This document shows, one piece after another, positions 170 to 57,689 of a stretch of 64,000 nucleotides of DNA. The stretch is from Macrostomum lignano (taxonomy: Eukaryota): positions 310,001 to 374,000 of the forward strand of contig NIVC01000307.1 in the NCBI GenBank assembly GCA_002269645.1. The letters are read 5' to 3'. The notes below the pieces were generated by a model. The model saw only the letters and a list, made by a program, of their open reading frames with translations. It did no database searches and was not told the origin of the DNA. The translations under genes and the position numbers were made by a program. Each line of letters opens with the position of its first letter. Positions within the stretch are counted from its first letter, which is position 1.

Positions 170-4976
<4,807 letters not shown>

Positions 4977-10394: not shown

Positions 10395-11543
10395 ATGCCT
10401 GGAAGTACGCCAGCATCGCCAACTAAAGGAGTTGGTAAAACGGTTTCGAGCGACAAAGCACCACCGCTTGCGATCTCGTCGAAATCAGTCCAAGCGACAA
10501 AGTCGGCAACAGCGACAGCGCAGAACCCAAGCGCACAAGTATCGAGAGGACAGCAAGTTGACATCGAAAAACTCGATGAAAGTTCGAACTTCCAGAGGTG
10601 GTTGGACCGATTCACACTGTGCAGTGAACTCAACGGCTGGCAGGACGACACGAAAAACAAGCTGTTGCTGATGAAGCTCAGCACCAAGCTGTACGACGCA
10701 TTGGCAGATCGAGCCGCTCCCAAGAAGCCGGGAGAAAAGAGCTTCGATGAACTGACCAAACTACTGGCCAGCATCCTGGAACCAAAGACGTTCGTCATGG
10801 CTGAGAGATTCAATTTCCAGCATATCACTCGCACGGCATCAATGAGCATTCGTGAGTATGCACAGCAACTCTGCATGCAGGCAGACAAGTGTCAGTTTGG
10901 CCTATCCAGAGATGAGAGACTGAGAGATCAGCTCGTATTCGGTTTGAATGACAAGGTGGCCATCAGCAAGTTATTGGAACAGGACTTCAGCACTCTCACG
11001 TTTGAGACAGCTATCAACATCGCTGAGGCGCACCAGAACATATCACAAACGCAAATACTAAAGGGTTGCACCAGTCAGCCGCAGTCTTCTGAAGTAATGA
11101 AAATTTCAGCATCGGTGGCCAGAGGCTCCCACTCTACAAGCTCCAAGTGTGGCAGATGTGGCACAATGCATGGCTCCAATGGAGGGTGTCCTGCGAAAGG
11201 AAAAACGTGCAACAAATGTGGCATGCAAAACCACTTCGCAACAGTTTGCAAAACGAAATCAACTGGTTTTGGCAAAGGTCGAAAATCGTTCAAAAGCCCG
11301 TCAGCATCTGGTCAATTTAGGCGAGCTGCAGTGTGCCCAAGGACCACAAGCTTTGTAGATGCAAGCGAAGCTGAACAGGAGGATTGTTTTCACATTCGAC
11401 ATCCCGTTGATAGCTACACCGTGCCTGTTAGGCTCAGACACACGAGCGGGTCGATGCTTAGCGTGAACGCACAAATCGATACTGGGGCAGGAGTTTCGGT
11501 ATGTCAAAAACGATCTGGAAACGATTGGGTTGTCCAAAGCTGA
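10395..11543 (+). CDS. gag: Gag with Cys/His zinc knuckles, running into the N-terminal half of the aspartic protease
   Basis: WLDRFTLCSELNGW..KNKLLL capsid-like segment; CGRCGTMH..CPAKGKTCNKCGMQNHFATVC; IDTGAGVSV protease motif. Confidence 0.9.
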   Translation: MPGSTPASPTKGVGKTVSSDKAPPLAISSKSVQATKSATATAQNPSAQVSRGQQVDIEKLDESSNFQRWLDRFTLCSELNGWQDDTKNKLLLMKLSTKLYDALADRAAPKKPGEKSFDELTKLLASILEPKTFVMAERFNFQHITRTASMSIREYAQQLCMQADKCQFGLSRDERLRDQLVFGLNDKVAISKLLEQDFSTLTFETAINIAEAHQNISQTQILKGCTSQPQSSEVMKISASVARGSHSTSSKCGRCGTMHGSNGGCPAKGKTCNKCGMQNHFATVCKTKSTGFGKGRKSFKSPSASGQFRRAAVCPRTTSFVDASEAEQEDCFHIRHPVDSYTVPVRLRHTSGSMLSVNAQIDTGAGVSVCQKRSGNDWVVQS

Positions 11544-24384: not shown

Positions 24385-25395
<1,011 letters not shown>

Positions 25396-25829: not shown

Positions 25830-28800
25830 CTACATTATAGTCTTCTCCGAATAAACTGATCCGAGTCGAGAATTCCAGACTCTCGACCTGGCAGCCAGCA
25901 TCAGACCAAAGCAAGCCGCCAGCAAAAGCAGCATCGAGGATGCTAAACTAATCAGCAGATAGTTTCCTCGATTCTCATGATCAGCCTTATCATTGACTGT
26001 CATTCGACTTTTTGCAGTTTTCATTAGACAGAAAAATGACTTCAATCTGCGAGAAGCCGGCTTCATCGCTTCGTCCATGACAACGGGACTGCACGGATTT
26101 GTGAAGTTAATTAGTGACTTTTTTATTACGGTACCTGTTGAATCTTCGTCCAAAAATGAAAACGATCATGATTTCGATATTAGAACTAAATTATTAACAT
26201 GATAATATGTATGGAGGTTGTAATGTAAGGCATAACTGCAGGAGAACAAGAAACCATTATTAAAGCGAAAAAACGTTCGACTTTTTCAACCATTACAGAC
26301 TCACCTGTCTAAGCCTCGTCTGATGAAAATTTCACCAACGTCGTCGTGCCTCCCTGCTAGAAGTTCCGTGGATCCCGGCTGCAACCTCCTGCGGCACTCC
26401 GCCAGCGCCAGGCGGGGACTGACTGCTCGTACCATCAAAGCGCAGCCTGCTGACGGCTCCGACTTTGACAGCAGTAGCGGTCGGAGCGGCGGTGGGCAGC
26501 GACGATCGCCAGCAGCTTCGAGCGACTCAACGGAATCCACTGGCTGCCGATGTCGTCGCTGAGGCGCCTTGCAAAGGTGAAAGTGTCGCGCCTCTGGTTG
26601 GTACGTCCGCCACACCAGCCTCGGTCGAGCGTCCATCAGGAAGCCGAAGTTCATAGGCGGGTTGCTGGGACCGACCAGCCAGTTTCTGAAAGGGGGAGAT
26701 TCTGCATGTACAGTATTTAATAATGATCTGTTTCAGGTTGTGTCCGTTTTTGTATATTACATAAACTCACACGCTGACATTAACGCTCGTGTTGTCCTTG
26801 AGCCACTTGAACTTCCCTCCGTCTGCCTCGTCTCTGTACAGTCCGGTCCACGCCGCGTCTCCTTGAAACCTGCAGTCTCGGCACTGAGCTCTGTAGTCTT
26901 CTCTGAGTCTCCAGTTCCTTGCTGAGTAGTCAGTAACCCAGTCCATCTCGGCTTGAGAATCGATCCAGAGCAGGTGAGCAGACGGGTCTCGTCTCTGACA
27001 GTCAGACACGGCCTCGGTGAGGTTCCTTCCATTGGATCCCTTGACCAGGAGGTAGCAGAAGCCATTGAATTGCAGCCAGTCCTGTGACGGACAGGCCCCT
27101 TGAAAAGCTGTGGTTGTGGTTGGCATAACGGTGGTTGTTTCAGGTGTCGACTGCAGAGTAGTAAGATCTTGAGTAGTGGGTGGCACAGTAACAATTTCAT
27201 AAGTTGTTGTCGGCTCCCTTGTTGCGATAGTTGTTGTTGCTGTCGCAACAGTGGGTGCCGTTGTGCTGACAAACACAGGCGCTTTGCAGAAGTGATAGTG
27301 CTTGGCTTCAGGCGAGTAGGTTCGGAAGTACAAGTCGTTCGTTGTTTCATAAATATAAGCGTAATTTTTCGGTGGATTTTGAGGATCTATAAAAAACCAT
27401 CGCCTAAAGTGAAAGGAAACTCGTCGAATAGAAACGGGTTGAATCATACCGATTCACCGAAAAACAAGAAGTTTACATTCACTTACCCAATGACATTCAC
27501 TTTGGAGTTGTCCCTGAGCCACTTAAACCTTCCTCTGTCCGTTTCATTTCTGTACAGTCCGGTCCATGCGGCGTCTCCCAGCTGCCGGCAGTCTCGGCAC
27601 TGAGCTCTGTAATCTTCTCTGAGTCTCCAGTTCCTTGTTGAGAAGTCCATCACCCAGTCCATCTCGGCTTGAGAATCGATCCAGAGTAGGTGAGCAGACG
27701 GGTCTCGTCTCTGACAGTCAGACGCGGCCTCGGTGAGGTTCCTTCCGTTGGATCCCTTGACCAGGAGGTAGCAGAAGCCCTTAAACTGTAGCCAGTCCTC
27801 TGACAGACATGAACCTTGAGGGATTTCTGATTTTTTAGTAGTCAACCCCATAGTAATCGAAGTCTGCCGCTCAGAAATCGTAGGTTCTAAAGTGACAGTT
27901 TCAGCAGTTTTTGTCGGCAATGACAAGCTAGACAATGGCGGCATCGTGGAAGATGATGGTGTTGCGCTGACAAGCTTAGGTGCTTTGCAGAAATGATAAA
28001 AGTTTAATCCTGATATAGAGGTTCGAAAGTACAAGTTGTTCAACGATTCATAAATGTAGCCATAGTTTCTGGGTGGATAAGCAGGATCAAAGACGAACCA
28101 TTCTCTGAAATGACGACAGACGACATATTTGGCTTTTGAAAATAGCGAATCCTTTATGCCACTTTGATACAGGCTTCGAAGCTTTTCTGTCGGCATTTAC
28201 ATGAAAAATCAAGCAAAATTTTCTAGAATGCCTCGTAAAAAGACGCTGTCTATATGAAATATTTCTTAAAAGATAGCTAGCTGTAATGTGACATTACAAA
28301 GATTAATATTTCATTGACTGTTTTAGCATCTCCCATTTATCATAAATAGCACTATGGATACATCTTTAAGGACATTTACTGTTTACTCAAATTAAACTCA
28401 AAAGTTTGCAACTGCAAAATAAACAACCTGCAAATATAAACTATATCTAGCCTTAAGACATGCAAATCATGCAAAAATAGGTATTTTTACGATAGAAAAG
28501 CAACGATTATGTTATTTACAGCCGTTTCAATCAAAATTTCCTAGCGAGGTTATTTATGAAAATCATCCGCAAAAAACAGGTAAAATAATAGGTGCAAACA
28601 AGTAAAGCGATCTCACACTGTGACTTCCAAATTTGAGTTGTCCCTGAGCCACTTGAAATTCCCACCATCTGCCTCGTCTCTGTACAGTCCGATCCACGCT
28701 GCATCTCCTTGATGCCTGCAGTCTTGGCACTGAGCTCTGTAGTCTTCTCTGAGTCTCCAGTTCCTTGCTGAGAAGTCCATCAACCAGTCCATCTCGGCTT

Positions 28801-29038
28801 GAGACGTGACCCAGAGCAGGTGAGCAGACGGGTCTCGTCTCTGACAGTCAGACACGGCCTCGGTGAGGTTCCTTCCGTTGGATCCCTTGACCAGGATGTA
28901 GCAGTTGCTCCCGTATGACAACCAGTCGGTAGGGCAGTCAACGGCGTCTGCAGCCTGGTGACACAGCTGTAGGCTCAGCATCATCAGCAGCCACAGTGTG
29001 AATGCATATCCTAAAGCTTTAGCTTGTCCCCTATTCAT
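25830..29038 (-). CDS. Type I membrane multi-C-type-lectin receptor (SP, 3 atypical CTLDs, shortened CTLD-like domain, TM), ~770 aa; exons 29038-28617, 28104-27487, 27403-26771, 26685-26305, 26088-25830
   Basis: Signal peptide; repeated CP..W...FCY..A..DC..HLL..EMDW..W.GL..FKWL..FCK; Thr/Ser linkers; TM YLLISLASSMLLLLAACFGLMLAA. All introns are phase-2 GT-AG and exon lengths keep frame. Confidence 0.8.
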
Positions 29039-29595
29039 ATTCAGAGTTCTTCTGTACAGCAAACTAGACCTTATACTTGTAGCGCACAGTATTTGCCTGC
29101 TTCAGTTAGCCTTGACACCTGATTTAACATTGAGCTATAGCCCGACTTATTAGTTGCTACTTTTTACAGTGCTGCCACCAGTTGCGAATAGTTAAATAAC
29201 TTAAATAATTGAAAGGAGAGATTCTCCTCGCTGATAATATACGGGTATCGTGATTCTGCCCTTCCTAAGGAACATTAAAAGGCTAAATGTGTGTCGTCCT
29301 TGTGCGTAAAGACTGTGCCTTATTACTTACGAGTAATACATGTAGCTAGTTTATCCCAGATTTATTGCGAGGTATAGAAAATCCAATAGCAAAATAGCAT
29401 ATGAAAATCGAACCTCCACCATTGGTTCAGATTCGCTAGAAAAAAGTCAAACAACAAAGTTGAATGGCTAAACAAAAATATACGCCAGTCTATTTTTATG
29501 TGTTTACTTGTTTTGCTTGTTATATATTTACTGCATATGCAATAAAATAATTTATTGCTCATTTTCACGTCATCAATTGGTGTGTACTTAAGTTT

Positions 29596-32500
29596 TTAAA
29601 ATCCTAGCAGAAAAGCCAAAATGACCAGACTGGCCAGCAGACAGCGCACACAACCCGCCTGACATCTCGCTGCAGACCGCGGAAGAGACGCCTCGACGCC
29701 GCAGAAGAAGGTGCGAAGCCGACGCCGCCTCGCCAATTGGTTGCCACGAAAACTGCGGGCAGGCAACGCGGCGGATTCGAGACTCAATGAATCGGTCAGG
29801 CAAATCCGTAACAAAAAATCGCATCGGCTCTTGAAACTCACCTGGCGAAAGGTTTAGCAAAGTCCACGCGCCTCCCCACCAGAAGTGCCGTGGACCCCGG
29901 CTCCAACCTCCTGCGGCACTCCGCCAGCGCCAGGCGGGGGCTGACTGCTCGTACCGTCAAAGCGCAGGCTGCTGACGGCTTCGACTTTGACAGCAGCAAC
30001 GGTCGGAGCGGCGGCAGGCACCGGCGATCGCCAGAAGCTTGGAGTGACTCAACCGAATCCAGTGGTTGTCGATGCCGTCGCTGAGGCGCCTTGCAGAGGT
30101 GAAAGTGTCGCGCCTCTGGTTGGTACGTCCTCCACACCAACCGCGGTCGAGAGTCCATCAGGAAGCCGAAGTTCATAGGCGGGTTGCTGGGACCGACCAG
30201 CCAGTTTCTGTAAGGTCAGAGATTTTATATTAGTGATTCGTTTTAGGGTGTTTCCGTTCATCTTTATGGCAGTAAAGCTCACACGCTGATGTTGACAATG
30301 CCATTTTCCATGAGCCACTTAAACTTCCCTCCGTCTGCCTCGTCTCTGTACAGTCCGGTCTACGCTGCGTCTCCTTGAAACCTGCAGTCTCGGCACTGAG
30401 CTCTGTAGTCTTCTCTGAGTCTCCAGTTCCTAGCCGATGTGTCCATCACCCAGTCCATCTCAGATTGAGACGTGACCCAGAGCAGGTGAGCAGACGGGTC
30501 TCGTCTCTGACAGTCAGACACGGCCTCGGTGAGGTTCCTTCCGTTGGATCCTTTGACCAGGAGGTAGCAGAAGCCCTTAAACTGCAGCCAGTCCTGTGAC
30601 GGACAGGCACGTCGAGGAGCTGTGGTGGTCGTTAGCATAACGGTAGTTGTTTCAGGTGTCGACTGCAGAGTAGTTAGGTTTGGACTAATCGTTGGCAAAG
30701 TAACAATTTCATGAGTTGTTTTCGGCTCCCTTGTTGCAATAGCTGTTGTTGCTGTCGCACCAGTGGGGGCTGTTGTGCTGACAAACACAGGCGCTTTACA
30801 GAAGTGATAGTGCTTGGATTCAGGTGAGTAGGTTCGGAAGTACAAGTTGTTTACTGTTCCATAAATGTAGCCATAGTTTCTTGGTGGATTACCTGGCTCT
30901 AAAAAAACCAATTCCTGAAAGGAATGAAATTTACTTATGTTTGAAATGGAGCTAAAGCCAATTGTAAGAACTATAAGCAAATTTAAATGCATCACTTACA
31001 CGGTAACATCTAGATTGGAGTTATCAATGAGCCACTTGAAATTCCCTCCGTCTGCCTCGTCTCTGTACAGTCCGGTCCAGGCGGCATCTCCCAGGTTCCT
31101 GCAGTCTCGGCACTGAGCTCTGTAGTCTTCTCTGAGTCTCCAGTTCCTTTCTGAGTAGTCGGTAACCCAATCCATCTCGGCTTGAGACGTGACCCAGAGC
31201 AGGTGAGCAGACGGGTCTCGTCTCTGACAGTCAGACACGGCCTCGGTGAGGTTTCGTCCGTTGGATCCCTTGACCAGGAGGTAGCAGAAGCCTTTAAACA
31301 GCTGCCAATCCACTGATGGGCATGAACCCTCGTTCTCGTTGGGCCGTGTTGTTTCCTCTGCAATAAATTATACACAGGTCTAGAAACAAAAAAGTATTTT
31401 CAACTTTCAGTTTTTTAACTTCAAAGCTGAATCTAAATCCTGCTAGTTAATTGCTTTGCCGTAGACTTTTCATTTATGTTATTTTGTCATACGTTTTTAG
31501 TAGGTCTTTCTGTCGTGAATTCTGATAGTGCTCCTGTCGATTGCTCGGTTTGTAGATTCATTCGTCGGTCTGTTGTTGATTCAGTCCAATTGAAAACTGA
31601 AGAAATCGTTGTAAATTTTGTTGTTTGTCGTTCTGTTTTATCTGTTTGTAGTTCTGTCAATATCTTTTTGTTGTTCCATTTATCTTTACTGCTGTTTTTT
31701 CCGTCAATCGTTTTCTTGTTGATTCGGAAGAAATTTCTGTTGTTGGTTGTGTGAAGCGTTCTATTTGTCCTCTCATTGATCGTTTCGTTTGTTGTTCTGT
31801 GTCTTGTTACGAGCTATTCTTTATCCTGTTATCCTGTTATTTTTTTGTCAGTATATTTGTTTTTTATTCCGTAAGTTTGTCTGTTGTGTTGGTTCCGTGA
31901 ATAGTTCTGTTGCTGATTTTGACGATGTGCTGTTGTTTGTTGTGTTGATCGTTCTTGTTGATGTGGTTCTGTCTATCCTTCTGTTATTCATATCGTCAGT
32001 CTCTCTGTTACGAGAGCATTGATTCCGTCAACAGTTCGGCTTTTCGTTCCGTTGACGGTGCTAAAGCTATTGTTGGTCACTTTTTCGATCGTTCTGTTGA
32101 GGGTTTTATCGGTGGCTCCGTATTTTTTCTGTACTCGACACTGTCGTGTATTCGGTCGATTGTTTTGCTGTAGACGCCAGTGCTGTTGTTATTTTTTAGC
32201 CAGCTACTTCTATTATATTTTTGCACAAAAGTGGAGTTATGAGTGGAGTGTAGTGTATGAAGGCTAACTCACTTTTGAGACAAAAAAGGTTAATAATAAC
32301 CCCATTTCGCATTGTAATTTGGCCCCTGTATTTTTGGGTCGTCATGCTCACTTAAGGCGGCATGTTTAGGCATCAACGGCTGTCATTATAATGAGTCTCT
32401 ATGGGGTCCATAGGTGGCGTCATAGAAACGCCATAATCTGAATGAACTACTTCTGACAAACGTTTTGAACGTACCAATATGTCGAGTGCCTAAATAAGTG

Positions 32501-35089
32501 ACAGTGTCCTCAAATCCACCAGGCTTCTGAACGATCACGCTCAGATTGTACTCAAGACCTGTGTGCAAATTTTTGCATGTAGCCATCGGAACCGTCGATT
32601 TGACAACTGTGACATCGCTGCGACACGACTGCAGGTGAGCGCGTAGGTGACTGCTGGAGTGTTGGACTCCGACCAGCTCACTGTAATTCCAGTCTCGTAC
32701 ACCGCGTATTGAACTTTGTTGACATCTATGGGGAATAGTTCTGAAATTTTGTTTTGCAAATACATGTCCACTGAAACAGGTATGGAGGTCATCATGAACG
32801 TAGCAACGAAAGTGCACAAAATTCAAATTGCGGTTTGAACAACATTCGAAAAACACGAATATTGTTTTTCGCAACAACTTTTGCCAAGGCAAAGGTGGCA
32901 GTTCCAATAATTACATTAGGGCTTTAGTGCATTTCTGGCTCGGGAAAACAAAAGTATAGCTACATGGTGCTACAGAATATTCTTACGAAAAAACAAGGCA
33001 TTATAATTATTGAAAGTCAATTAGAAATAAGCTTATAACATGCACTTAAATAAAATCTTTTATATTGAAATTTCTAGAATGTACTTTTAGCGTGATTGCT
33101 TACAAATGTCTCTTTTTCCCCAAAGCATGCAATTTTTACAAAAATAGATTATGGCACCGAAATATTGCTAATAACTGCTTACTGGTAAGCGCCGTGCCTC
33201 GAACATAACTAGACTGAGGAAATCCCGGCTTCACAGTTCGAACTGTCACATCGATGCTGGCGCCAGATTGCAGATTGCTGCACAGGACACTGTCGCCATC
33301 GACAATTCCTGCGCAGCTGACTTCGTAACGGATGCCAACATCGGGCGACGGAACCCAATGGACTCGAAAACTGGTCTCATCAATGTCAGAGAAGTGCAAC
33401 GGCTCTGGTAGATTGCTGAGGGCTGACGATATGAGGCTTCGAGTTAGTACTTATTTGTTAGATATTTATCAATTAAACGAGACTATCATGCAACTGCCGC
33501 GTGAAATCACGCCATCGGTAGCGCGGCGATTCAAGGTCAAATGCTAAATAAGGCAGAACTGCCACGCACAGTGCGCGTGATCTATGGGTAAACAAAACCA
33601 AGGTATCCTCGTTCAGTTACGTGCACATGAATTTGGTGCTTGTGCCTTAACATTACGAGCGTATAACTACCAAGGGGATTCCCCCCCCCCCCCTGACATT
33701 TTTTGCTGCACCGGAACGGAGCAATGCAGGCACACAGAACTCCAGAACGTCGAGATTTTTAACGATTCTACCAGAAGGTCGGATTTATTGATTTTCCTTG
33801 TATTGCATGATTTAATAATGTACGTGCTTTATTCAGTTCGCTATGTACGCTGATTGAGCCCAGGCCCATTACACCCACCCCCTCCGCGCTGGCTGATATT
33901 CTGACTGACTGCAAATAAATATATCATCGAGAGGGCTTGCTAGCCCTATGTACAGTTTACGGTTTACGTTTCGTTTTGTTATCATCTCGCATGAGCCTCA
34001 GCTCCAGATAGTTTGGCGGACCATCGGTCTCTTCATTTCTACAGTACACCTTCAACAGGTGGCAACAGATGACTATGGACACCCTGTTGCAAATTTCTTT
34101 AGTTTCGCTGATCAAGCCTTGATAGTGAGCAAGCCTCAACTGCTGGACATCCTCAGCTAGTCTTTCAAACATTCCGTCATCACCCCGACGCCGTCAGCAC
34201 CTTCAACAGGTGGCACCAGGTGACTATGGACACACTGTTGCAAATGTCTTCGATGTCGCTGACCGAGCATCAGTAATGGGCAAACTTCAACTCCTGGTAC
34301 GAGAATTCTCAACCTGTTGAAGGCAGAATCGTCGAATATCTCGACGGTCCGGAGGGCTGGCGATTTGATTCTTGTTTGAGAAGTTGTGCGCAACAAAAAG
34401 TTTGTCCGTGTTCTGGAGTTTCGTGTGCCTGAGTTGCATCGTTCTGGCGCAGTAAAAACAATTGTGTCCCCCCTTGGTAACTCGACGGGTGGAAAGATGG
34501 TTTGCCATTCCGCTGTTAAAATTGACATTTGGGCAATTCTCGCCTATGAAGGTCAGAGGTCAGGCCCCAAGGCTGACACAAGGTATGTACATTGCCTGAT
34601 GATAAGAAAGTCAGGGCTGCTGAACACCCTGTGTTAGTGCCCGCCTGCGTACACATCTGTCCCCAGTAACAAAAACCCGTGTTCAACTTGCCTTATGCTT
34701 CACTCTGTCTCACCTGTCTTGGCATTCAAAACGTAGGACGGACTCAATTCGCAGTCGCGATGCCCAGCCTGCAGCAACACCACGTATTCCATGGCGGGAA
34801 TCAATCCGGAAAATTTGTACGTGGTACCCGAGGTGGTGATTTGCTGTTCGTGACCTGTACAGCCGGGACAACTGAGCACGTAGTAAAAGTCCCATAGCTC
34901 CGGTACGGTCGATGGCTGCAGCCAATCGACAATGATTTCCGACACAGTTGATCGACGAACAATCGCTAGGGTGATTTTGTCGACTTGGTTTGGGTTGGCA
35001 ACGCCGCACCTGATGTTTGCCTGCACATTTGAGCTAATTAAACAGCAGCTCAGGATTAAAAAGCATGAGAGATTCCAGTTCGAGCTCAT
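29596..35089 (-). pseudogene. Disrupted gene: SP, 3 FN3, decayed Thr-rich exon, 2 atypical CTLDs, shortened domain, hydrophobic tail; exons 35089-34714, 33422-33183, 32740-32475, (32167-31493), 31357-31000, 30914-30283, 30207-29842, 29752-29596
   Basis: FN3 W/Y motifs in three phase-1 exons. Lesions: FN3 exon 3 is 266 nt (1 short); the CTLD exon is 632 nt versus 633 in paralogs (A7 at 30901-30907 versus A8 at 40082-40089); TGG->TAG at 30360-30362; the mucin-like exon has stops in all frames. Confidence 0.75.
33668..34500. mobile_element. Unclassified foldback-like element (copy 2), in intron 1 of the FN3-lectin pseudogene
   Basis: Imperfect inverted arms 33668-33775 and 34321-34479 (TACCAAGGGG...CCCCTTGGTA); internal ~151-bp direct repeat (34049/34200); homologous to 7840-8390. 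Confidence 0.6.
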
Positions 35090-35329
35090 CTCGAGTGGAG
35101 AAAGTTAATTAATCTTTTAAGTATATTAGTCTGAGCACAGTCTGCGCTCGTTTCTCTAAGACCACTCTTGACTCTGAGACCGCAGGCAGATATAGTGTGA
35201 AATTGCACAGCTGGTCAGCTAAGATAAGAGAGAAAAAGAAACTAAGGTTTATGGCCAGATAAAGTAACAATTTTTTCGCAAAAAACTGATGCACTATTTG
35301 GTAAAGTTCGATCTAACTACCACTTCTGT

Positions 35330-35835
35330 TCCACCAGTCTGGATCTAGCTACCGTGCTTCTGCTCAACCAGTCTGGATCTAACTACCACTTCTGCTCTAC
35401 CAGTCTGGATCTAACTACCACTTCAGCTCTACCAGTCTGGATCTAACTACCACTTCCGCTCTACCAGTCTGGATCTAACTACCACTTCCGCTCTACCAGT
35501 CTGGATCTAACTACCACTTCTGCTCTACCAGTCTGGATCTAACTACCACTTCCGCTCTACCAGTCTGGATCTAACTACCACTTCTGCTCTACCAGTCTGG
35601 ATCTAACTACCACTTCCGCTCTACCAGTCTGGATCTAACTACCACTTCTGCTCTACCAGTCTGGATCTAACTACCACTTCCGCTCTACCAGTCTGGATCT
35701 AACTACCACTTCTGCTCTACCAGTCTGGATCTAACTACCACTTCTGCTCTAAAGTCTGGATCTAACTACCACTTCTGTTCTACCAGTCTGGATCTAACTA
35801 CCACTTCTGCTCTACCAGTCTGGATCTAACTACCA
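35330..35835. repeat. 32-bp minisatellite ACCAGTCTGGATCTAACTACCACTTCYGCTCT (~16 copies)
   Basis: Period 32 (35401/35433). Confidence 0.95.
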
Positions 35836-36247
35836 GTAGAGCTAGTGAGTAAAATGCAGCTACGATCATAATTAATCAAGTCGATATGCCCCACTAGCAC
35901 CCAGAAGTCTTCTGACGAGTACATTGCTCATTAAAAAAATAAATAAGGGCTGGAAATTCTCTTCTACACAGTATTTTGTACGCCGTGAATACTTTCGATA
36001 ACAGTCACAGATAATGATCTGTATACGGGTTTGACTTCAGTTTTTTACATTCCAACCTCTACATCACTGGAGTAAAAAATGTCAAAACTATTGCATAACA
36101 TCACATAGGCATTTTTGCAATGGCTTTATCTGACCTAATGAGCAGGAGCAGATACAATTACAAGTGTACTATCAAACATCTCTTGTCCTGTTATTCCTGT
36201 AATGAACTTGGCCTGAAACTGTTACTTGCAACTTTAGGCATTCTACC

Positions 36248-36480
36248 CTGAGCTACTCTGAGCTACTCTGAGCTACTCTGAGCTACTCTGAGCTAGTCTA
36301 AGCTACTCTAAGCTACTCTAAGCTACTCTGAGCTACTCTGAGCTACTCTGAGCTACTCTGGCTACTCAGAGCTACTCTGAGCTACTCTGAGCTACTCTGA
36401 GCTACTCTGGGCTACTCAGAGCTACTCAGAGCTACTCTGAGCTACTCTGATCTACTCTGAGCTACTCAGAGCTGCCTATG
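36248..36480. repeat. 10-bp repeat GAGCTACTCT
   Basis: Seen directly. Confidence 0.93.
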
Positions 36481-37068
36481 GCTAGTATATGCTACTATTC
36501 CTTTTGATTTGAATTCTATACTATCAACCTCATGATACCATCAATCACACATCCAAGTGCCCATTTTAAGGTTTTCCTTATAGTCCTTATAGTTTGCGCT
36601 TAGTTGGAATTTAAATATAGCTTGCTAACAGAAATTAAGCATCCTTTCACGAACGATATCGCGTGAGTAACGTTAAAAACGTATACAAAAAGTTTTTGCT
36701 ACTGATTAGGATAACAGCACACCAAATATGTTGTAAGTTTTTATAGTTTCAATCGTAGTGTTTGGACATCCTTCAATCTCAAGTAACAGTTTACAGTGGT
36801 CTTTATTTAGTTGAAAATCAAGTTCTTTATTAAAAGTTTCAGGATTGTTTCATTTAGAATACGAAAACAGGTACAAAACTTTAAGGCGCGTACATGATAT
36901 AAAGACTCAATCGAAAGACCTTCAATCAGAGATAAACAATATTTGAAATAAAAGTATTTGCAGTCAAAGCTCAAAACTAAACAGGTAGCTCTTTAAGCTA
37001 CCTGTTTCTAAGAAAAGGCAAGCGTGTTTTTTGCAATAAATATTCAAAAAGAACAGAGTAACGCCAAT

Positions 37069-40000
37069 TTAAATGACGCTTGTTTTCATCGCATCGCTAC
37101 CAACTGGTTCCATCGACACAGAGACAGAGGTTGGTGTGTCCAATTGAATATTAGAAATTCCGTTACGCGTCACGTGACTTGCGTCGTCTAAGAATCCGCC
37201 ATTGACGGCCGACTGCGCAGCACCTGCAGCCTGTGCGGAGGCAAAGAATTTGAAGTAGATAACGGCAGCAGCAACTGCTGCAGCTACGACAGAGACCGAG
37301 CTGATCCAGATGATGTGCACGTACAGCATTGGTAAACCGCCCTCTGGCTGAGTCAGATCAGAGCTGGTGACAATTGTGGTGCTGTCTAAACCTGAAGTTG
37401 AAGCCCGGCTCGCTGTTGTTGAATGCCGCATCGTAATTGAAGTATCTTGACTGTCCGAAGTCGTCAGTGTTGACTGTACAAGGGTGGTTTCCATTCTCGA
37501 GGTAATGGGTGATGCTACGGTGGTTTCGGAAGCTGTTTGACTCGATGTAGGTTCCGTTGTTTGAGCAGTGCTAATTTTTTCTGCAGTTGACGGGCTTGTT
37601 GACGTCCTGAGTGTAAAATCTGTCGGTGATGATGTTGTCTGGCTCTGTGTTGCCTCTGGTGTTGTCTGGCTCTGCGTTGCCTCTGGTGTTGTCTGGCTCT
37701 GCGTTGCTTCTGGTGTTGTCTGGCTCTGCGTTGCTTCTGATGTTGTCTGGCTCTGCGTTGCCTCTGGTGTTGTCTGGCTCTGCGTTGCTTCTGATGTTTT
37801 CTGGCTCTGCGTTGCTTCTGGTGTTGTCTGGCTCTGCGTTGCTTCTGATGTTGTCTGGCTCTGCGTTGCTTCTGGTGTTGTCTGGCTCTGTGTTGCCTCT
37901 GGTGTTGTCTGGCTCTGCGTTGCTTCTGGTGTTGTCTGGCTCTGTGTTGCCTCTGATGTTGTCTGGCTCTGCGTTGCTTCTGGTGTTGTCTGGCTCTGCG
38001 TTGCTTCTGGTGTTGTCTGGCTCTGCGTTGCTTCTGGTGTTGTCTGGCTCTGCGTTGCTTCTGGTGTTGTCTGGCTCTGCGTTGCTTCTGGTGTTGTCTG
38101 GCTCTGTGTTGCCTCAATTGTAGATTCAGTCGGTGTTGTGTCTGGTGTCGACTGGCTCTGCGTTGATTCGATTGTAGACTCATTCGGTGTTGTGTCTGGT
38201 GTCGACTGGCTCTGTGTTGTCTCAATTGTAGATTCAGTCGGTGTTGTGTCTGGTGTCGACTGGCTCTGTGTTGCCTCAATTGTAGATTCAGTCTGTGTTG
38301 TGTCTGGTGTCGACTGGCTCTGTGTTGTCTCCATTGTAGATTCAGTCAGTATTGTGTCTGGTGTTGAATGACTCTGTGTTGCCTCAATTGTAGATTCAGT
38401 CGGTGTTGTGTCTGGTGTCGACTGGCTCTGCGTTGATTCGATTGTAGACTCATTCGGTGTTGTGTCTGGTGTCGACTGGCTCTGTGTTGTCTCAATTGTA
38501 GATTCAGTCGGTGTTGTGTCTGGTGTCGACTGGCTCTGTGTTGCCTCAATTGTAGACTCATTCGGTGTTGTGTCTGGTGTCGACTGGCTCTGTGTTGTCT
38601 CAATTGTAGATTCAGTCGGTGTTGCGTCTGGTGTCGACTGGCTCTGTGTTGCCTCTTGTGTCGACTGGCTCTGTGTTGTCTCAATTGTAGATTCAGTCGG
38701 TGTTGTGTCTGGTGTCGACTGGCTCTGTGTTGTCTCAATTGTAGATTCAGTCTGTGTTGTGTCTGGTGTCGACTGGCTCTGTGTTGTCTCAATTGTAGAT
38801 TCAGTTGGTGTTGTGTCTGGTGTCGACTGGCTCTGTGTTGCCTCAATTGTAGATTCAGTCTGTGTTGTGTCTGGTGTCGACTGGCTCTGTGTTGCCTCAA
38901 TTGTAGATTCAGTCTGTGTTGTGTCTGGTGTCGACTGGCTCTGTGTTGCCTCAATCGTAGATTCAGTCGGTGTTGTGTCTGGTGTCGACTGGCTCTGCGT
39001 TGATTCGATTGTAGACTCATTCGGTGTTGTGTCTGGTGTCCACTGGCTCTGTGTTGCCTCAATTGTAGATTCAGTCTGTGTTGTGTCTGGTGTCGACTGG
39101 CTCTGCGTTGATTCGATTGTAGACTCATTCGGTGTTGTGTCTGGTGTCGACTGGCTCTGTGTTGCCTCAATTGTAGATTCAGTCTGTGTTGTGTCTGGTG
39201 TCGACTGGCTCTGTGTTGCCTCAATTGTAGATTCAGTCTGTGTTGTGTCTGGTGTCGACTGGCTCTGTGTTGCCTCAATTGTAGATTCAGTCGGTGTTGT
39301 GTCTGGTGTCGACTGGCTCTGTGTTGCCTCAATCGTAGATTCAGTCGGTGTTGTGTCTGGTGTCGACTGGCTCTGCGTTGATTCGATTGTAGACTCATTC
39401 GGTGTTGTGTCTGGTGTCCACTGGCTCTGTGTTGCCTCAATTGTAGATTCAGTCTGTGTTGTGTCTGGTGTCGACTGGCTCTGCGTTGATTCGATTGTAG
39501 ACTCATTCGGTGTTGTGTCTGGTGTCGACTGGCTCTGTGTTGCCTCAATTGTAGATTCAGTCTGCGTTGTGTCTGGTGTCGACTGGCTCTGTGTTGCCTC
39601 AATTGTAGATTCAGTCTGTGTTGTGTCTGGTGTCGACTGGCCCTGCGTTGATTCGATTGTAGACTCATTCGGTGTTGTGTCTGGTGTCGATTGGCTCTGT
39701 GTTGCCTCAATCGTAGATTCAGTCGGTGTTGTGTCTGGTGTCCACTGGCTCTGTGTTGCCTCAATTGTAGATTCAGTCTGTGTTGTGTCTGGTGTCGACT
39801 TGCTATATGTCGTATAATCAGCTAGTATTGTGGCAGACGTTGTAACACTTGAGCTAGAAGTAGGCCCAGTTTGTGTTGTAGACTCGGATGTCACTAATGT
39901 TGTCGATTCTGTTGTTAGGATATTCGTTGTTGTTGGCGTATGCGTTGGCGCTGTTGTGCTAACAAACACAGGCGCTTTACAGAAGTGATAGTGTTTGGAT

Positions 40001-42131
40001 TCAGGCGAGTAGGTTCGGAAGTACAAGCTGCTCACTGTTTCATAAATGTAGCCATAGTTTCTTGGTGGATTACCAGGCTCTAAAAAAAACCAATTCCTGA
40101 AATGAATGAAATTTACTTATGTTTGAAATAGAGCTAAAGCCAATTGTAAGAACTATAAGCAAATTTAAATGCATCACTTACACGGTAACATCTAGATTGG
40201 AGTTATCAATGAGCCACTTGAAATTCCCTCCGTCTGCCTCGTCTCTGTACAGTCCGGTCCAGGCGGCATCTCCCAGGTTCCTGCAGTCTCGGCACTGAGC
40301 TCTGTAGTCTTCTCTGAGTCTCCAGTTTCTTGCTGAGAAGTCCATCACCCAGTCCATCTCGGCTTGAGACGTGACCCAGAGAAGGTGAGCAGATGGGTCT
40401 CGTCTCTGACAGTCAGACATGGCCTCCGTGAGGTTTCGTCCGTTGGATCCCTTGACCAGGAGATAGCAGAAGCCGCTGAATTGCAGCCAGTTCTGTGACG
40501 GACAGGCACCTTGAGGAGCTGTGTTGGTCGTTGACAAATCGGTAGATGTTTCATGTGTCGATTGCGGAGTAGTCAGGTCTGAACTAGTGGGTGGCGAAGT
40601 AACAGTTTCATGAGTTGATGTCGGCTCCCTTGTTGCAATAGTTGTTGTTGCTGTCACACCAGTGGGCGCCGTTGTGCTGACAAACACAGGCGCTTTGCAG
40701 AAGTGATAGTGCTTGGCTTCAGGCGAGTAGGTTCGGAAGTACAAGTCGTTCGTTGTTCCATAAATGTAAGCATAGTTTCTTGGTGGATTACCGGGATCTA
40801 AGACAAACCATTTCCTGAAATACAAACAAATAATATGGGTATACTGAAAAGAAGCTTATAGTGTTGGAATTGATTTTAGTTAATTAAGCAATCATTAAAT
40901 GCATCACCCACACTGTGACATCTACATTAGAGTTATCTTTGAGCCACTTAAAATTCCCTCCGTCTGCCTCGTCTCTGTACAGTCCGGTCCAGGCGGCATC
41001 TCCTTGAAACCTGCAGTCTCGGCACTGAGCTCTGTAGTCTTCTTTGAGTCTCCAGTTTCTAGCTGAGAAGTCCATCACCCAGTCCATCTCGGCTTGAGAC
41101 GTGACCCAGAGCAGGTGAGCAGATGGGTCTCGTCTCCGACAGTCAGACACGGCCTCGGTGAGATTCCTTCCGTTGGATCCCTTGACCAGAAGGTAGCAGA
41201 AGCCTTCAAACTGCAACCATTCATTGGATGGACAAGGCTCTCGTTCGCTGTTTGAATTCATCTTGCAGATGGGAAACTTCTTGTCCGTCTTTAAATCCGT
41301 CCTAAGCCTGGATGGGCTCGTGGCTTCCGTCAAGGATACGAAGTCGTTGGGACTCAGTTTGGGCTTGCCAAGGTACCACGAGCTGCAAAGTGGTTGAAGT
41401 ATGTAGAGTATCAATCAACTTTATTTAGGCTTCCTTACGAGTATTTTTGTACTAACTCATGGGTGTAAGGGGAAAATTAAGCAGCTCTAATGAGCTATTA
41501 AGAGCAACTAAAAACAAATGAAGAAACCTTATTTATGTACCATCAAGTCGAAAACGATCTATTTCGAATTCAAGTGAGCTTTATTTATTTGCTCACTAAG
41601 TAAGCGGAAGCAGTTGAAAATGATTGTTAAGAATAGCCAAGTTATTGTAGTAGCCTTGTTTTTTCGTTAAATTCGTTAAACCACTAAATCGTTTGTTTGA
41701 ATCAGTGCAACAGCTCAAATAACTCACAATTTGAAGCTAACTGGACTGCCGTCCATCAGCCAGATCAAGTCTGAGCTCTGCTGCGAGTCGCTCAGCGTCG
41801 CTCCCTGCGCGCCGATCCAGCCGGAGTACGTCTGGCTGCAGTTGCCACACTGCCCCCAATGCTCCCGGATGCCGAATCTGCCACCCTGCAGGGCCCAGTC
41901 CAGTTCCTCCTGCGTCTCCGCCCACAGCAGGTCGCCGCCAGAGTCCGCACATGCGGCTCTCGCCTCTTGAAAGGTCCTGCCAGGACCGTAGAGAGCTCGG
42001 TAGCAGTAGCTTCCGTAGGACATCCAGCCAGAAGGACAAACAGCAGCGCCTACGGCCTGGTGACACAGCATCACGGATGATAACAGTACCAGCAGGAAGG
42101 TCGAAAGATTGAAGAAAAAAAACTTTCGCAT
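37069..42131 (-). CDS. Type I membrane lectin-mucin (SP, 3 atypical CTLDs, ~870-aa Thr/Ser/Gln stalk, TM, cytoplasmic tail), ~1511 aa; exons 42131-41728, 41382-40912, 40814-40182, 40096-37069
   Basis: Exon lengths 404/471/633/3028 keep frame across phase-2 GT-AG introns. Signal peptide; TM LYVHIIWISSVSVVAAAVAAAVIYF; ends KTSVI*. Confidence 0.85.
37630..38110 (-). repeat. Coding VNTR, 27-bp unit (TTPEATQSQ), ~18 copies
   Basis: In frame within ORF 37069-40035. Confidence 0.95.
38111..39800 (-). repeat. Coding VNTR, 54-bp unit (TPDTTPTESTIEATQSQS), ~31 copies
   Basis: In frame within ORF 37069-40035. Confidence 0.95.
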
Positions 42132-44517: not shown

Positions 44518-45282
44518 CTACAAACTGTACACAGCATTGTGACTGATACCGCCGCATCTCTCTTTCACGTTGCCTTCGCACGGGACTGAGCAGTCGAAAT
44601 CGGCACTCATGCCGTATTTGCCGTAGTGATCGCCGCAAGAGCACGTGTCCCCGTCTTGCATGCCCATGTACTTGGTGTTTTTTCCCTTGCACCAATTTGT
44701 GCACTTCTCCAGGGTCATCTCGTACATCCGGGTCCGGTCGGCACCCATGTCCGGGCTTGAATGGTTGTCTTCGAAGCAGCCTTTGTAATTTGAACCGTAG
44801 TCTGCGAAGCGAACGATTAGACGAGTTCAAAGAAGGCATCGTGGTTGGTTGCGTCGTGAAGACCCCCCAACCCCCGATTCTGAAACTGAGTCTACAGGCC
44901 AGGGATGGGCAAACTCCGGCCCACAAAGCCTCTCACAGCCCGCCCAAGGTTTGTCTCTTCTCAGCTCTTTTCTCTCTCCTTTCTCCGATTATCTTCTCTT
45001 CACTCATCTATTCTCTATTTTTCTCTCCTCTATTCCCTCTCGTTCCCTCTCTAATCTCTCTAGTCTGAAAAGTATTCTACCTGAAACTGAAAACTACGCA
45101 TTATTACTCTTATTGAATCAGTTGAGGTTGGGGGTATCGTAAAACGAAATAATGTCATATATTTTCTTACCGTAAGTCTCTTCAACTACTTCGTCTTCAG
45201 CCGCAACATTAGAAGCAAACATAAGACCCACTAGAAGGTACCAGCAGCATAAAATTCGGATGGTGCTGCACAAGCTAATCAT
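44518..45282 (-). CDS. Small secreted single-WSC-domain protein (~131 aa); exons 45282-45171, 44801-44518
   Basis: Signal peptide; YKGCFED..MTLEKCTNWC..YMGMQDGDTCSCG..C..PCEG....CGG...NAVY is the 8-Cys WSC pattern. Phase-1 intron with a CTAAT branch site. Confidence 0.85.
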
Positions 45283-52722: not shown

Positions 52723-52819
52723 TGCGAAACTGAAGTTAATTAGCAGCATTATTAATAAATAGCGGTGTCAACAAATAATATATTCACTTCTAGTGCTAAT
52801 TATCTTGCTCAAGTTTCTA

Positions 52820-57433: not shown

Positions 57434-57689
57434 GTTCAAGATAATAGCTGCTGATCAAGTGTAGCCTCTGAGTGAGTTGGATTACTGACTGAGTGGGGCA
57501 CTGCCGACTGGATTCTTTTGAGCAAGCAGAAATTGTCAAATTCAAGGCACCTGCAGTAGCACATGATGAAACAGTAATAGAAAAATAAGAGAATATACAA
57601 AAATCAATTAGTCTAATAATGACAATGGCGGAAATCTACGTACAATAGCACTTATTTTCCTACTAAGAGGCGAGTTGCAAAGGAAATAA

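What the first reader, a model, noticed from the sequence alone, without database searches (positions are those of the whole stretch)
25830..42131. Candidate novel system: tandem cluster of diversifying atypical C-type lectin surface receptors
Seen: three co-oriented genes reuse the same lectin module with different partners. Architectures are (CTLD)3-mini-domain-TM, (FN3)3-mucin-(CTLD)2-mini-domain-hydrophobic tail (disrupted), and (CTLD)3-long mucin-TM. Together they hold 8 full CTLDs, 7 of them with near-identical N-halves, and a WSC glycan-binding gene lies 2.4 kb upstream. Established: birth-and-death lectin clusters underlie invertebrate immune recognition, allorecognition and mucus or adhesion functions. 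Inference: a lineage-specific recognition or glycocalyx locus evolving by exon shuffling.
Basis: partly seen in the sequence, partly recalled or inferred. Interest (0 to 1): 0.75.

Follow-up and report, generated by a model that had tools for sequence, protein, structure and literature searches.

The report
Flatworm-specific divergent C-type-lectin-domain gene cluster
This stretch of the flatworm Macrostomum lignano genome holds two intact genes and one broken gene for membrane glycoproteins built from an unusual lectin-like module; the cluster is real and restricted to this lineage, it changes by gaining and losing exons, and it is conserved rather than diversifying.

Summary
The observation largely holds. 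Window 25830-42131 (minus strand) carries eight copies of a 2-exon, about 150-aa module in three co-oriented genes, and a WSC-domain gene lies 2.4 kb upstream. The window is Macrostomum lignano. A structure prediction (pLDDT 88) with Foldseek, plus profile searches, place the module in the C-type lectin-like domain (CTLD) superfamily. It is atypical: the C2-C3 disulfide and the EPN/WND calcium-sugar site are absent, and an invariant CxxC insert is present.

Corrections:
- Gene 2's "mucin" is an intron.
- Gene 2's "hydrophobic tail" is unsupported.
- Gene 2 is a pseudogene with three lesions: a 7-bp deletion, a 1-bp deletion and TGG>TAG.
- The "mini-domain" looks like a degenerate CTLD remnant.

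Each internal exon encodes the C-third of one CTLD, a Thr/Pro linker and the N-two-thirds of the next CTLD, with phase-2 introns on both sides. Arrays can therefore grow or shrink by whole exons. A paralogous M. lignano locus has two genes and six modules instead of three genes and eight.

"Diversifying" is not supported: dN/dS is mostly about 0.2. Close relatives occur only in M. lignano and in two metagenome fragments. Function is untested. The most likely role is as surface binding, adhesion or glycocalyx proteins that do not use the canonical calcium site. Interest is modest.

The parts
37069..42131 (-). Gene 3. Exons 42131-41728, 41382-40912, 40814-40182, 40096-37069. Product 1511 aa: signal peptide, three CTLDs, long mucin stalk, TM, 57-aa cytoplasmic tail ending -KTSVI.
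   Evidence: Spliced model with an open frame and GT-AG introns. Pfam Lectin_C scores 48.9 bits on the spliced ectodomain, above the 22.6-bit cut-off. Coding exons are 98.4-100% identical to the paralogous locus L001.
41262..42038 (-). Gene 3 CTLD1, the divergent copy. N-part 42038-41728, 345-nt intron, C-part 41382-41262.
   Evidence: Motif scan, alignment A1, Pfam UL45/Lectin_C-like hits on exon 1.
40694..41234 (-). Gene 3 CTLD2. N-part 41234-40912, C-part 40814-40694.
39976..40504 (-). Gene 3 CTLD3. N-part 40504-40182, C-part 40096-39976.
   Evidence: The best Pfam Lectin_C stretch covers this domain end to end.
37633..39804 (-). Gene 3 mucin tandem repeats. 54-nt/18-aa units (TESTIEATQSQSTPDTTP, about 30 copies), then 27-nt/9-aa units (EATQSQTTP, about 18 copies).
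   Evidence: Tandem Repeats Finder. Composition 54% S/T/P. 30 units here against 24 in L001. No Pfam domain.
37243..37329 (-). Gene 3 transmembrane segment (MLYVHIIWISSVSVVAAAVAAAVIYFKFF).
   Evidence: Sequence and coordinates. Conserved in L001.
29841..35089 (-). Gene 2, a pseudogene in this copy. Signal peptide, three FN3 domains (exons about 35089-34715, about 33422-33181, about 32795-32476), a roughly 1.1-kb intron, CTLD1 (31322-31000 + 30914-30795), CTLD2 (30605-30283 + 30207-30090), and a truncated mini-domain ending at 29841. No TM exon.
   Evidence: FN3 Pfam hits on window ORFs and on the 97%-identical P0004 (59.7 bits, 3 stretches). tblastn of P0002. Homology to gene 1 ends at 29870.
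32611..32630 (-). Gene 2 lesion 1: a 7-bp deletion in the third FN3 exon, causing a frameshift relative to the intact L001 copy.
   Evidence: Alignment of window against L001, coordinates.
30892..30915 (-). Gene 2 lesion 2: a 1-bp deletion in a T run (T7 here, T8 in L001 and in gene 3), just after the acceptor of the CTLD1 C-part. It causes a frameshift and an immediate stop.
30360..30362 (-). Gene 2 lesion 3: TGG>TAG at the invariant Trp of the W[TI]GL strand of CTLD2.
25830..29038 (-). Gene 1. Exons 29038-28617, 28104-27487, 27403-26771, 26685-26305, 26088-25830. Product 770 aa: signal peptide, three CTLDs, mini-domain, TM (25961-25890), 19-aa tail ending -EKTIM.
   Evidence: Spliced model, all introns GT-AG. 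The last splice matches database model P0004. TM from hydropathy.
26568..28936 (-). Gene 1 CTLD1 (28936-28617 + 28104-27984), CTLD2 (27809-27487 + 27403-27283) and CTLD3 (27093-26771 + 26685-26568).
   Evidence: The AlphaFold2 model of CTLD3 has pLDDT 88, and all top Foldseek PDB hits are CTLDs.
26305..26561 (-). Gene 1 'mini-domain', continuing into the first codons of the tail exon. It has four cysteines spaced like C0-C0'-C1...C4 of a long-form CTLD and is probably a degenerate CTLD remnant.
   Evidence: hhalign against the CTLD profile gives E=1.6e-4 for the P0005 version and 0.085 for the P0004 version, in the same register. The structure prediction failed.
28898..29038 (-). 5' part of gene 1 exon 1 (signal peptide and first hairpin). 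It is related to gene 3 exon 1, so the first exon is chimeric.
   Evidence: 70 nt at 78.6% identity, E=1.7e-9. The proteins share LCHQA..A..CP..W.SYGS.CY.
29039..29870 (-). Spacer between the truncated end of gene 2 and the ATG of gene 1. It has no counterpart in L001.
   Evidence: BLAST finds no match in L001.
44518..45282 (-). Small secreted WSC-domain gene. Signal-peptide exon about 45282-45167, WSC exon about 44826-44518.
   Evidence: Pfam WSC 64.8 bits, E=8e-18. ORFs and splice donor.

Best explanation
The region is a Macrostomum-restricted cluster of type-I membrane glycoprotein genes assembled from a divergent, non-canonical C-type lectin-like domain (CTLD).

Shown:
- The module has the CTLD fold.
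- It keeps the C0-C0' and C1-C4 cysteines and the WIGL strand.
- It lacks the C2-C3 disulfide and the EPN/WND calcium-sugar ligands.
- It carries a family-specific 18-residue insert with an invariant CxxC.
- Every CTLD is split by a phase-2 intron just before an invariant Trp. Each internal exon therefore encodes the C-third of domain i, a Thr/Pro linker and the N-two-thirds of domain i+1, and is symmetric in phase.
- The paralogous locus L001 has two genes and six modules: a gene 3 orthologue and one intact FN3x3-(CTLD)3-mini-TM gene.
- The window has three genes and eight modules: gene 3; a broken FN3x3-(CTLD)2 gene; and a signal-peptide-(CTLD)3-mini-TM gene with a chimeric first exon.
- Coding sequence is under purifying selection.

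Inferred:
- Duplicating or deleting whole internal exons adds or removes exactly one CTLD without breaking the reading frame. This also explains why N-parts are homogeneous while the 'terminal' C-part, which lies outside the repeating unit, is very different.
- Gene 3 is a membrane-tethered mucin that holds three CTLDs far above the cell surface. Gene 1 is a shorter three-CTLD receptor.
- Both bind a protein or glycan ligand through a calcium-independent, non-canonical surface. They probably serve in epithelial glycocalyx, adhesion or particle/microbe binding, possibly anchored through C-terminal PDZ-type motifs.
- Gene 2 is non-functional in this copy.
For: - Organism and family: the hits are 34-98% identical and all from M. 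lignano.
- Fold: AlphaFold2 pLDDT 88, pTM 0.84. The top 50 Foldseek PDB hits are all CTLDs (DCIR, CEL-I, Mincle, dectin-2), probability 1.0, TM 0.62-0.82.
- Sequence homology: the family profile matches PDB CTLDs at E=2.7e-10 (DEC-205), 8e-8 (CD302) and 1.3e-6 (DCIR). hhalign to a canonical CTLD gives 96% probability, E=1.1e-9. Pfam Lectin_C scores 48.9 bits on spliced gene 3.
- Atypical features: invariant columns C1, C13, C32, C71, C74, C146 and no C2/C3. The insert with CxxC has no counterpart in CD302 or in a canonical CTLD, and only the proline of the 'EPN' position is conserved.
- Exon logic: phase-2 donors and acceptors at every module. The same intron position occurs in the 34-40%-identical paralogue P0001 and in an environmental contig.
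- Module turnover: L001 architecture; module-level orthology and two window-only modules; a 1.5-kb internal paralogous block at 84.6% identity; the chimeric exon 1; mucin repeat number 30 against 24.
- Pseudogene: three lesions relative to L001.
- Selection: dN/dS 0.17-0.55 between modules and 0.08-0.44 against L001.
- Topology: signal peptides and single TM segments.
Against: - No expression, localisation or binding data were available, so the function is inferred from architecture only.
- Pfam Lectin_C does not reach threshold on spliced gene 1.
- Whether gene 1 exon 1 is a true first exon is untested. One older database model (P0003) joins gene 2 to gene 1.
- Pairwise, whole-segment dN/dS on 40-107 codons cannot exclude positive selection at a few sites.
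- The direction of change, loss in L001 or gain in the window, is unresolved.
- The three gene 2 lesions could in principle be assembly errors. This is unlikely for a 7-bp deletion and a substitution.
Confidence: 0.6

Rival explanations
1. One reading: a diversifying birth-and-death receptor cluster for immune recognition or allorecognition, in which copies are selected to differ in ligand specificity.
For: - Tandem paralogues, a pseudogene, and copy and architecture differences between paralogous loci.
- A lineage-restricted family.
- C-parts fall into three sequence classes.
Against: - dN/dS is mostly about 0.2 in both N- and C-parts and 0.08-0.44 against L001.
- Gene 3's coding exons are 98.4-100% identical to L001's, against about 94-97% for aligned blocks that include non-coding sequence.
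- Only about ten family proteins are present in the databases.
- The canonical sugar site is absent.
- The C-part classes track position in the array (internal or terminal), not gene identity.
Confidence: 0.12
2. Genes 2 and 1 form one transcription unit, FN3x3-(CTLD)n-mini-TM as in L001. The interval 30206-28617 would be an intron holding decayed duplicate exons, so the locus has two genes and the FN3-bearing one is simply broken.
For: L001 has exactly such a single intact gene. Database model P0003 splices gene 2 onto gene 1 exon 3. All donors and acceptors are phase-2 compatible.
Against: - Gene 1 exon 1 has an ATG, a hydrophobic signal peptide related to that of gene 3, an intact in-frame N-part and a good donor.
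- Used as an internal exon, it would place one N-part directly after another.
- The FN3 part carries two frameshifts and a stop, so a long transcript could not encode the fusion.
Confidence: 0.2
3. An assembly artefact: the extra modules are mis-joined haplotigs or collapsed repeats, and no real three-gene cluster exists.
For: The M. lignano genome is repeat-rich and partly polyploid. The two arrangements share flanks about 94-97% identical, or 98-100% in gene 3 exons.
Against: - Modules differ by 7-17% at the nucleotide level, and the two window-only modules are 13-17% from all others, so they are not duplicated reads of one copy.
- An 832-bp unique spacer and a distinct first exon separate the genes.
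- P0003 (UniRef-sourced, 98% identical to the window) contains window-specific sequence from both gene 2's tail region and gene 1. Its assembly of origin was not checked.
Confidence: 0.04
4. The proteins are not surface receptors but secreted or shed components of mucus, adhesive or reproductive secretions, with the predicted TM segment serving only as a cleaved anchor.
For: Flatworm adhesive and mucus proteins often combine lectin-type domains with highly glycosylated repeats (PMC6410801). Gene 3 is mostly mucin.
Against: Single TM segments followed by conserved cytoplasmic tails are kept in both loci. The known M. lignano adhesive proteins are unrelated giant proteins. No cleavage module such as SEA was found.
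Confidence: 0.15

Closest known systems
CD302 and the DEC-205 (LY75) / mannose-receptor group of type-I transmembrane CTLD receptors
   Same: These are the best sequence matches of the family profile in the PDB (E=2.7e-10 and 8e-8). They share the long-form CTLD with an N-terminal hairpin disulfide, type-I topology and tandem CTLD arrays. Their CTLDs largely lack the calcium/sugar site.
   Different: No ricin-type or FNII domains. Three CTLDs rather than 8-10. The C2-C3 disulfide is missing and a CxxC insert is added. There is a mucin stalk or FN3 partners instead. No tyrosine-based endocytic motif occurs in the window genes.
Group XIV CTLD proteins (thrombomodulin, CD93, CD248/endosialin, CLEC14A)
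   Same: An N-terminal CTLD held on a Ser/Thr-rich mucin-like stalk, a single TM and a short cytoplasmic tail. The CTLD does not bind sugar. (Architecture stated from established knowledge.)
   Different: No Sushi or EGF domains, three CTLDs, no detectable specific sequence relationship, and a much longer tandem-repeat mucin.
Membrane-tethered mucins (for example the vertebrate MUC1/MUC4 type)
   Same: Gene 3 has about 970 residues that are 54% Ser/Thr/Pro, arranged in variable-number tandem repeats, then a TM and a cytoplasmic tail.
   Different: No SEA, NIDO or vWD modules. An N-terminal CTLD array caps the stalk.
Lineage-specific invertebrate CTLD expansions (such as the C. elegans clec genes and mollusc or crustacean C-type lectins)
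   Same: Lineage-restricted, tandemly arranged, mosaic architectures with pseudogenes. Many members lack the canonical calcium site.
   Different: A very small repertoire here. Purifying rather than diversifying selection. Membrane-anchored multi-CTLD forms with a distinctive cysteine framework.
Mlig-tuf2, an intestine-enriched M. lignano gene with weak Ig and CLECT domains (PMC12732829)
   Same: Same species, a species-specific gene with a weak CLECT hit, present in several near-identical copies.
   Different: The transcript sequences in File S3 of that paper are unrelated to the window genes. They encode a secreted CLECT + Ig protein with different sequence and composition. It is not the same family.

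Membership tests
C-type lectin-like domain (CTLD) superfamily | CTLD double-loop alpha/beta fold | tested here: met
   AlphaFold2 model of gene 1 CTLD3: pLDDT 88, pTM 0.84. 309 Foldseek PDB hits at E<=1e-3, and the top 50 are all CTLDs with TM 0.62-0.82.
C-type lectin-like domain (CTLD) superfamily | Significant sequence or profile similarity to known CTLDs | tested here: met
   Family profile against the PDB: DEC-205 2.7e-10, CD302 8e-8, DCIR 1.3e-6. hhalign to a canonical CTLD: 96% probability, E=1.1e-9. Pfam Lectin_C 48.9 bits (cut-off 22.6) on spliced gene 3. Below threshold on spliced gene 1 and on unspliced ORFs.
C-type lectin-like domain (CTLD) superfamily | Conserved C1-C4 cysteine pair and the WIGL motif | tested here: met
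   C32 and C146 are invariant, the W82 strand reads W[TI]GL, and the long-form C1/C13 pair is also invariant.
C-type lectin-like domain (CTLD) superfamily | Conserved C2-C3 disulfide in the beta3-to-loop region | tested here: not met
   No cysteine occupies the corresponding C-part positions in any of the 13 aligned modules. Instead there is an invariant CxxC (C71, C74) in an insert that CD302 and canonical CTLDs lack.
Calcium-dependent carbohydrate-recognition domain (true C-type lectin) | EPN or QPD tripeptide plus the WND motif forming calcium site 2 | tested here: not met
   The position aligned with EPN reads GPS, DPQ, EPG, DPA or KPK in the window modules, and QPK or HPR among others in P0001; only Pro is invariant. 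The alignment to a canonical CTLD ends before WND, where the family has [FW]RT.
Membrane-tethered mucin | Long Ser/Thr/Pro-rich tandem repeats followed by a TM segment | tested here: met
   Gene 3: 54% S/T/P over about 970 aa, 54-nt repeats in about 40 copies, TM at 37329-37243. O-glycosylation itself cannot be tested here.
Membrane-tethered mucin | SEA or other juxtamembrane cleavage module | tested here: not met
   No Pfam domain in the 988-aa last-exon product.
Mannose-receptor family (group VI CTLD) | N-terminal ricin-type Cys-rich domain, an FNII domain and 8-10 CTLDs | tested here: not met
   Pfam finds no ricin or FNII domain. There are three CTLDs per gene.
Birth-and-death, diversifying recognition-receptor cluster | Tandem paralogues with pseudogenes and copy-number differences | tested here: met
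   Three genes and eight modules here against two genes and six modules in L001. Gene 2 has three lesions.
Birth-and-death, diversifying recognition-receptor cluster | Excess non-synonymous change (dN/dS > 1) in the binding region | tested here: not met
   Nei-Gojobori dN/dS is 0.17-0.55 for N-parts and 0.07-0.49 for C-parts where dS is not saturated, and 0.08-0.44 against L001. Site-specific models were not run.
Birth-and-death, diversifying recognition-receptor cluster | Large, variable repertoire | tested here: not met
   Only 5 proteins at E<=1e-30 and about 10 with the family signature among 1.84 billion representatives. 7 and 2 hits in the two word-indexed searches.
WSC domain protein | Pfam WSC domain above the gathering score | tested here: met
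   64.8 bits against a 27.8-bit cut-off, covering 1-82 of 82 profile positions.
Fibronectin type III domains (gene 2) | Pfam fn3 match | tested here: met
   Window ORFs score 23.5, 19.6 and 16.2 bits singly. The 97%-identical P0004 scores 59.7 bits with three stretches.

The most novel reading that the evidence does not exclude
The CxxC-bearing, C2-C3-less module may define a new macrostomid-specific CTLD group with its own ligand-binding mode, for example redox- or metal-dependent. The alternative receptor forms found at paralogous loci (FN3-fused against signal-peptide-only, 24 against 30 mucin repeats, intact against null) may form a polymorphic surface-recognition or glycocalyx system used in mating, gamete or microbe recognition, possibly together with the adjacent secreted WSC protein.
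Probability: 0.08. Interest if true: 0.6.

Novelty: new variant of a known kind. Interest (0 to 1): 0.3.

Why it matters
The locus gives a clean, sequence-level example of how multi-domain receptors change domain number. Symmetric phase-2 exons are offset from the domain boundaries, so each exon carries the end of one CTLD and the start of the next, and whole-exon gain or loss keeps both the frame and the fold.

It also documents a CTLD subfamily that has lost the most conserved internal disulfide and the calcium site while gaining an invariant CxxC insert.

For M. lignano biology, it flags two intact, species-restricted surface glycoprotein genes as candidates for epithelial glycocalyx, adhesion or microbe binding. 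It also records a structural difference between duplicated genome regions.

None of this overturns current understanding. These are useful annotation and evolutionary details rather than a new kind of system.

Tried and rejected
- **Pfam on unspliced ORFs and on spliced gene 1.** This gave only sub-threshold UL45/Lectin_C hits. The question was resolved by splicing gene 3, building a family profile and predicting a structure.
- **Alignment A1.** I repeated the runs as A2.
- **Second structure prediction.** CTLD plus mini-domain of P0004 with a 3-row alignment failed (pLDDT 34). The mini-domain fold therefore remains an inference from hhalign.
- **Mlig-tuf2 (PMC12732829).** I considered it as a possible published identity for these genes. 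Its transcripts are unrelated, so I rejected it.
- **Mlig-ap1/ap2 adhesive proteins (PMC6410801).** These are unrelated giant proteins.
- **Literature search by gene and UniProt identifiers.** No papers found. A broader search returned nothing on these genes.
- **Second word-indexed homologue search.** Using gene 3's ectodomain added no new members.
- **Simple unequal-crossover history for the 3-gene and 2-gene arrangements.** No single breakpoint pair fits. I left this open.
- **Gene 2 'mucin' and 'hydrophobic tail'.** Both rejected.

Full report
**Source organism and strand.** The window is eukaryotic. A search with the spliced gene 1 protein returned seven proteins, all from the free-living flatworm Macrostomum lignano, at 34-98% identity. 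All features of the finding lie on the minus strand.

**The repeated module.** A motif scan finds eight N-parts (C..W..CY ... AAW[TI]GLYR) and eight C-parts (W..xP..P.N[YF] ... [FLI]CK) between 26568 and 42038, and none elsewhere in the window.
- Each module is split by a short intron, mostly 75-97 nt.
- In all eight cases the donor lies two bases into a codon (..GT|GTRAGT) and the acceptor supplies the third base, so every intron is phase 2.
- An internal exon therefore encodes the last 40 residues of one domain, a Thr/Pro-rich linker and the first 107 residues of the next domain.

**Gene models.**
- Gene 3 (42131-37069, 4 exons, 1511 aa): signal peptide, three modules, about 970 residues of mucin, a TM segment and a 57-aa tail. 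The mucin is 54% Ser/Thr/Pro, with 30 copies of an 18-aa unit and 18 copies of a 9-aa unit.
- Gene 1 (29038-25830, 5 exons, 770 aa): signal peptide, three modules, a Cys-containing 'mini-domain', a TM segment and a short tail. All introns are GT-AG, and the last splice agrees with database model P0004.
- Gene 2 (35089-29841): signal peptide, three FN3 domains, two modules and a truncated mini-domain.
- The WSC gene is real: Pfam 64.8 bits at 44521-44826, with a signal-peptide exon upstream.

**Corrections to the observation.**
- The supposed mucin of gene 2 (31376-32385) has 14-22 stop codons in every frame. It sits between canonical splice sites and is treated as an intron in database models P0002-P0004.
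- Gene 2's similarity to gene 1's 3' end stops at 29870, inside the mini-domain exon. There is no TM exon, so the 'hydrophobic tail' is unsupported.
- Gene 2 has three lesions relative to the intact copy in the paralogous locus L001: a 7-bp deletion in the third FN3 exon (near 32620), a 1-bp deletion in a T8 run immediately after the acceptor of the CTLD1 C-part (near 30900), and TGG>TAG at the invariant Trp of CTLD2 (30362-30360). In this copy it is a pseudogene.
- The seven similar N-parts are 76-92% identical (mean 84%), with a nearly invariant core.

**Is the module a C-type lectin domain?**
- Pfam on single ORFs or on spliced gene 1 gives only sub-threshold hits. The spliced gene 3 ectodomain passes Lectin_C at 48.9 bits against a 22.6-bit cut-off.
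- A 12-sequence family profile matches solved CTLDs: DEC-205 at 2.7e-10, CD302 at 8e-8 and DCIR at 1.3e-6. hhalign to a canonical CTLD gives 96% probability.
- An AlphaFold2 model of gene 1 CTLD3 is confident (pLDDT 88, pTM 0.84). Its best 50 Foldseek matches in the PDB are all CTLDs.
- The fold assignment is therefore sound.

**In what way it is atypical.**
- The alignment has invariant cysteines at positions 1, 13, 32, 71, 74 and 146. These are the long-form hairpin pair, the C1-C4 pair and a CxxC, with no C2-C3 pair.
- The CxxC sits in an 18-residue insert before the WIGL strand that CD302 and a canonical CTLD lack.
- At the position aligned with EPN, only the proline is conserved. WND is replaced by [FW]RT.
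- A calcium-dependent sugar-binding site is therefore not expected.
- The mini-domain has four cysteines spaced like a CTLD that has lost its long-loop region. It aligns weakly with the first 48 profile positions: E=1.6e-4 for the P0005 version and 0.085 for the P0004 version. A structure prediction with only three sequences failed.

**Distribution of the family.**
- A profile search of 1.84 billion representative proteins found 162 hits at E<=1e-3, but only five at E<=1e-30.
- Proteins carrying the family signature are M. lignano entries plus two short metagenome fragments. Beyond these, the hits checked are ordinary CTLD proteins of a caecilian, a clam and an annelid.
- One metagenome contig encodes a complete 'C-third + linker + N-two-thirds' exon with the same phase-2 donor.
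- The distant M. lignano paralogue P0001 (six modules plus TM) has introns at the identical position in its modules.
- The offset exon structure is therefore ancestral to the family.

**Evolutionary dynamics.**
- L001 (NIVC01000479.1 of assembly GCA_002269645.1) is syntenic with the window and shares its neighbours. Long aligned blocks are about 94-97% identical overall, and gene 3 coding exons are 98.4-100% identical.
- L001 holds only two lectin genes and six modules: the gene 3 orthologue and one intact FN3x3-(CTLD)3-mini-TM gene.
- A neighbour-joining tree of N-parts pairs five window modules with L001 modules. Gene 1's first two modules have no partner and lie 13-17% from everything else.
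- Within the window, 26336-27815 and 29858-31328 form a paralogous block at 84.6% identity.
- Gene 1's first exon is chimeric. 70 nt covering the end of the signal peptide and the first hairpin match gene 3 exon 1 (E=1.7e-9), and the remainder is a standard N-part. The 832-bp spacer upstream has no counterpart in L001.
- The mucin array differs by six 18-aa units between the loci.
- Module and exon shuffling is thus well supported. I could not resolve which arrangement is ancestral.

**Selection.**
- Nei-Gojobori estimates among the seven standard N-parts give dN 0.05-0.14, dS 0.2-0.53 and dN/dS 0.17-0.55, mostly about 0.2.
- Internal C-parts give 0.16-0.49. The two 'terminal' C-parts are nearly identical to each other and saturated against the rest.
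- Against L001, dN/dS is 0.08-0.44 where there are enough changes to estimate it.
- This is purifying selection. The contrast between homogeneous N-parts and a very different terminal C-part follows from the exon structure, because the terminal C-part lies outside the repeating unit. It is not evidence of diversification of a binding site.

**Interpretation.** The best-supported reading is a small, lineage-restricted cluster of type-I surface glycoproteins.
- Gene 3 is a membrane-tethered mucin capped by three CTLDs.
- Gene 1 is a shorter three-CTLD receptor.
- Gene 2 is a dead FN3-bearing paralogue whose intact counterpart exists at L001.
- Ligand binding, if any, must use a non-canonical, calcium-independent surface.
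- Both intact genes end in [ST]-x-hydrophobic C-termini (-KTSVI, -EKTIM), conserved at the other locus. This is compatible with PDZ anchoring, but I only noticed it and did not test it.
- No paper names these genes. The published Mlig-tuf2 CLECT gene is unrelated.
- Function therefore remains an inference from architecture.

**Verdict.** 'Diversifying', 'novel system' and the proposed immune or allorecognition role do not have support. The locus is a new variant within a well-known kind (CTLD membrane glycoproteins) and is of modest interest.

Noticed in passing
window 10395-14353 (+): Gag-like and pol ORFs of an LTR (Ty3/gypsy-type) retroelement, with reverse transcriptase, RNase H, integrase zinc-finger and integrase core domains. 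I did not look for LTRs.
   Followed up: partly
window 2681-3169, 16499-19097, 50856-52749, 57071-57439, 61057-63267 (all -): The neighbours are ordinary housekeeping genes: CCDC149-like, F-box/WD40, adaptor-complex medium subunit, syntaxin-5 and uracil phosphoribosyltransferase. The F-box/WD40 gene and the region of the 223-aa TM protein at 21577-22248(+) are also present next to the lectin genes in L001.
   Followed up: partly
window 35310-35835; L001 8418-9779: A 32-bp tandem array just upstream of gene 2 is about 2.6 times longer at the paralogous locus. A (TCTA)n microsatellite of about 1 kb lies downstream of gene 1 (24391-25394).
   Followed up: no
window 37072-37086 and 25833-25844 (-): Both intact genes end in [ST]-x-hydrophobic C-termini (-KTSVI and -EKTIM) that are kept at the paralogous locus (-KTSVI, -EKTII), which suggests class-I PDZ-binding motifs. 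The distant paralogue P0001 instead has an NPAF motif in its tail.
   Followed up: no
L004 (JGI metagenome 3300040801, contig Ga0450804_1943164), 335-781: An environmental contig encodes one complete family exon (end of a CTLD, Thr/Pro linker, N-part with CxxC) ending at the same phase-2 donor. Relatives therefore exist outside the reference genome.
   Followed up: partly
window 28898-28967 versus 42000-42069 (-): Gene 1's first exon borrows the end of the signal peptide and the first beta-hairpin from a gene 3-like first exon (78.6% over 70 nt). The rest is a standard N-part.
   Followed up: yes
window 30283-30330 (-) versus L001 14708-14790: The N-part of gene 2 CTLD2 is mosaic. Its 5' portion is orthologous to L001's second FN3-gene module (98% over the linker and N-part), but its last 15 codons are of the 'terminal' type seen in gene 1 CTLD3. 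This suggests recombination or conversion inside the exon.
   Followed up: partly
window 22203-22792 and 22867-23354: 15-bp and 21-bp tandem repeats give long open frames on both strands (Ala/Pro/Gly-rich). They lie just downstream of the 223-aa TM-protein ORF and are probably non-coding satellites.
   Followed up: no
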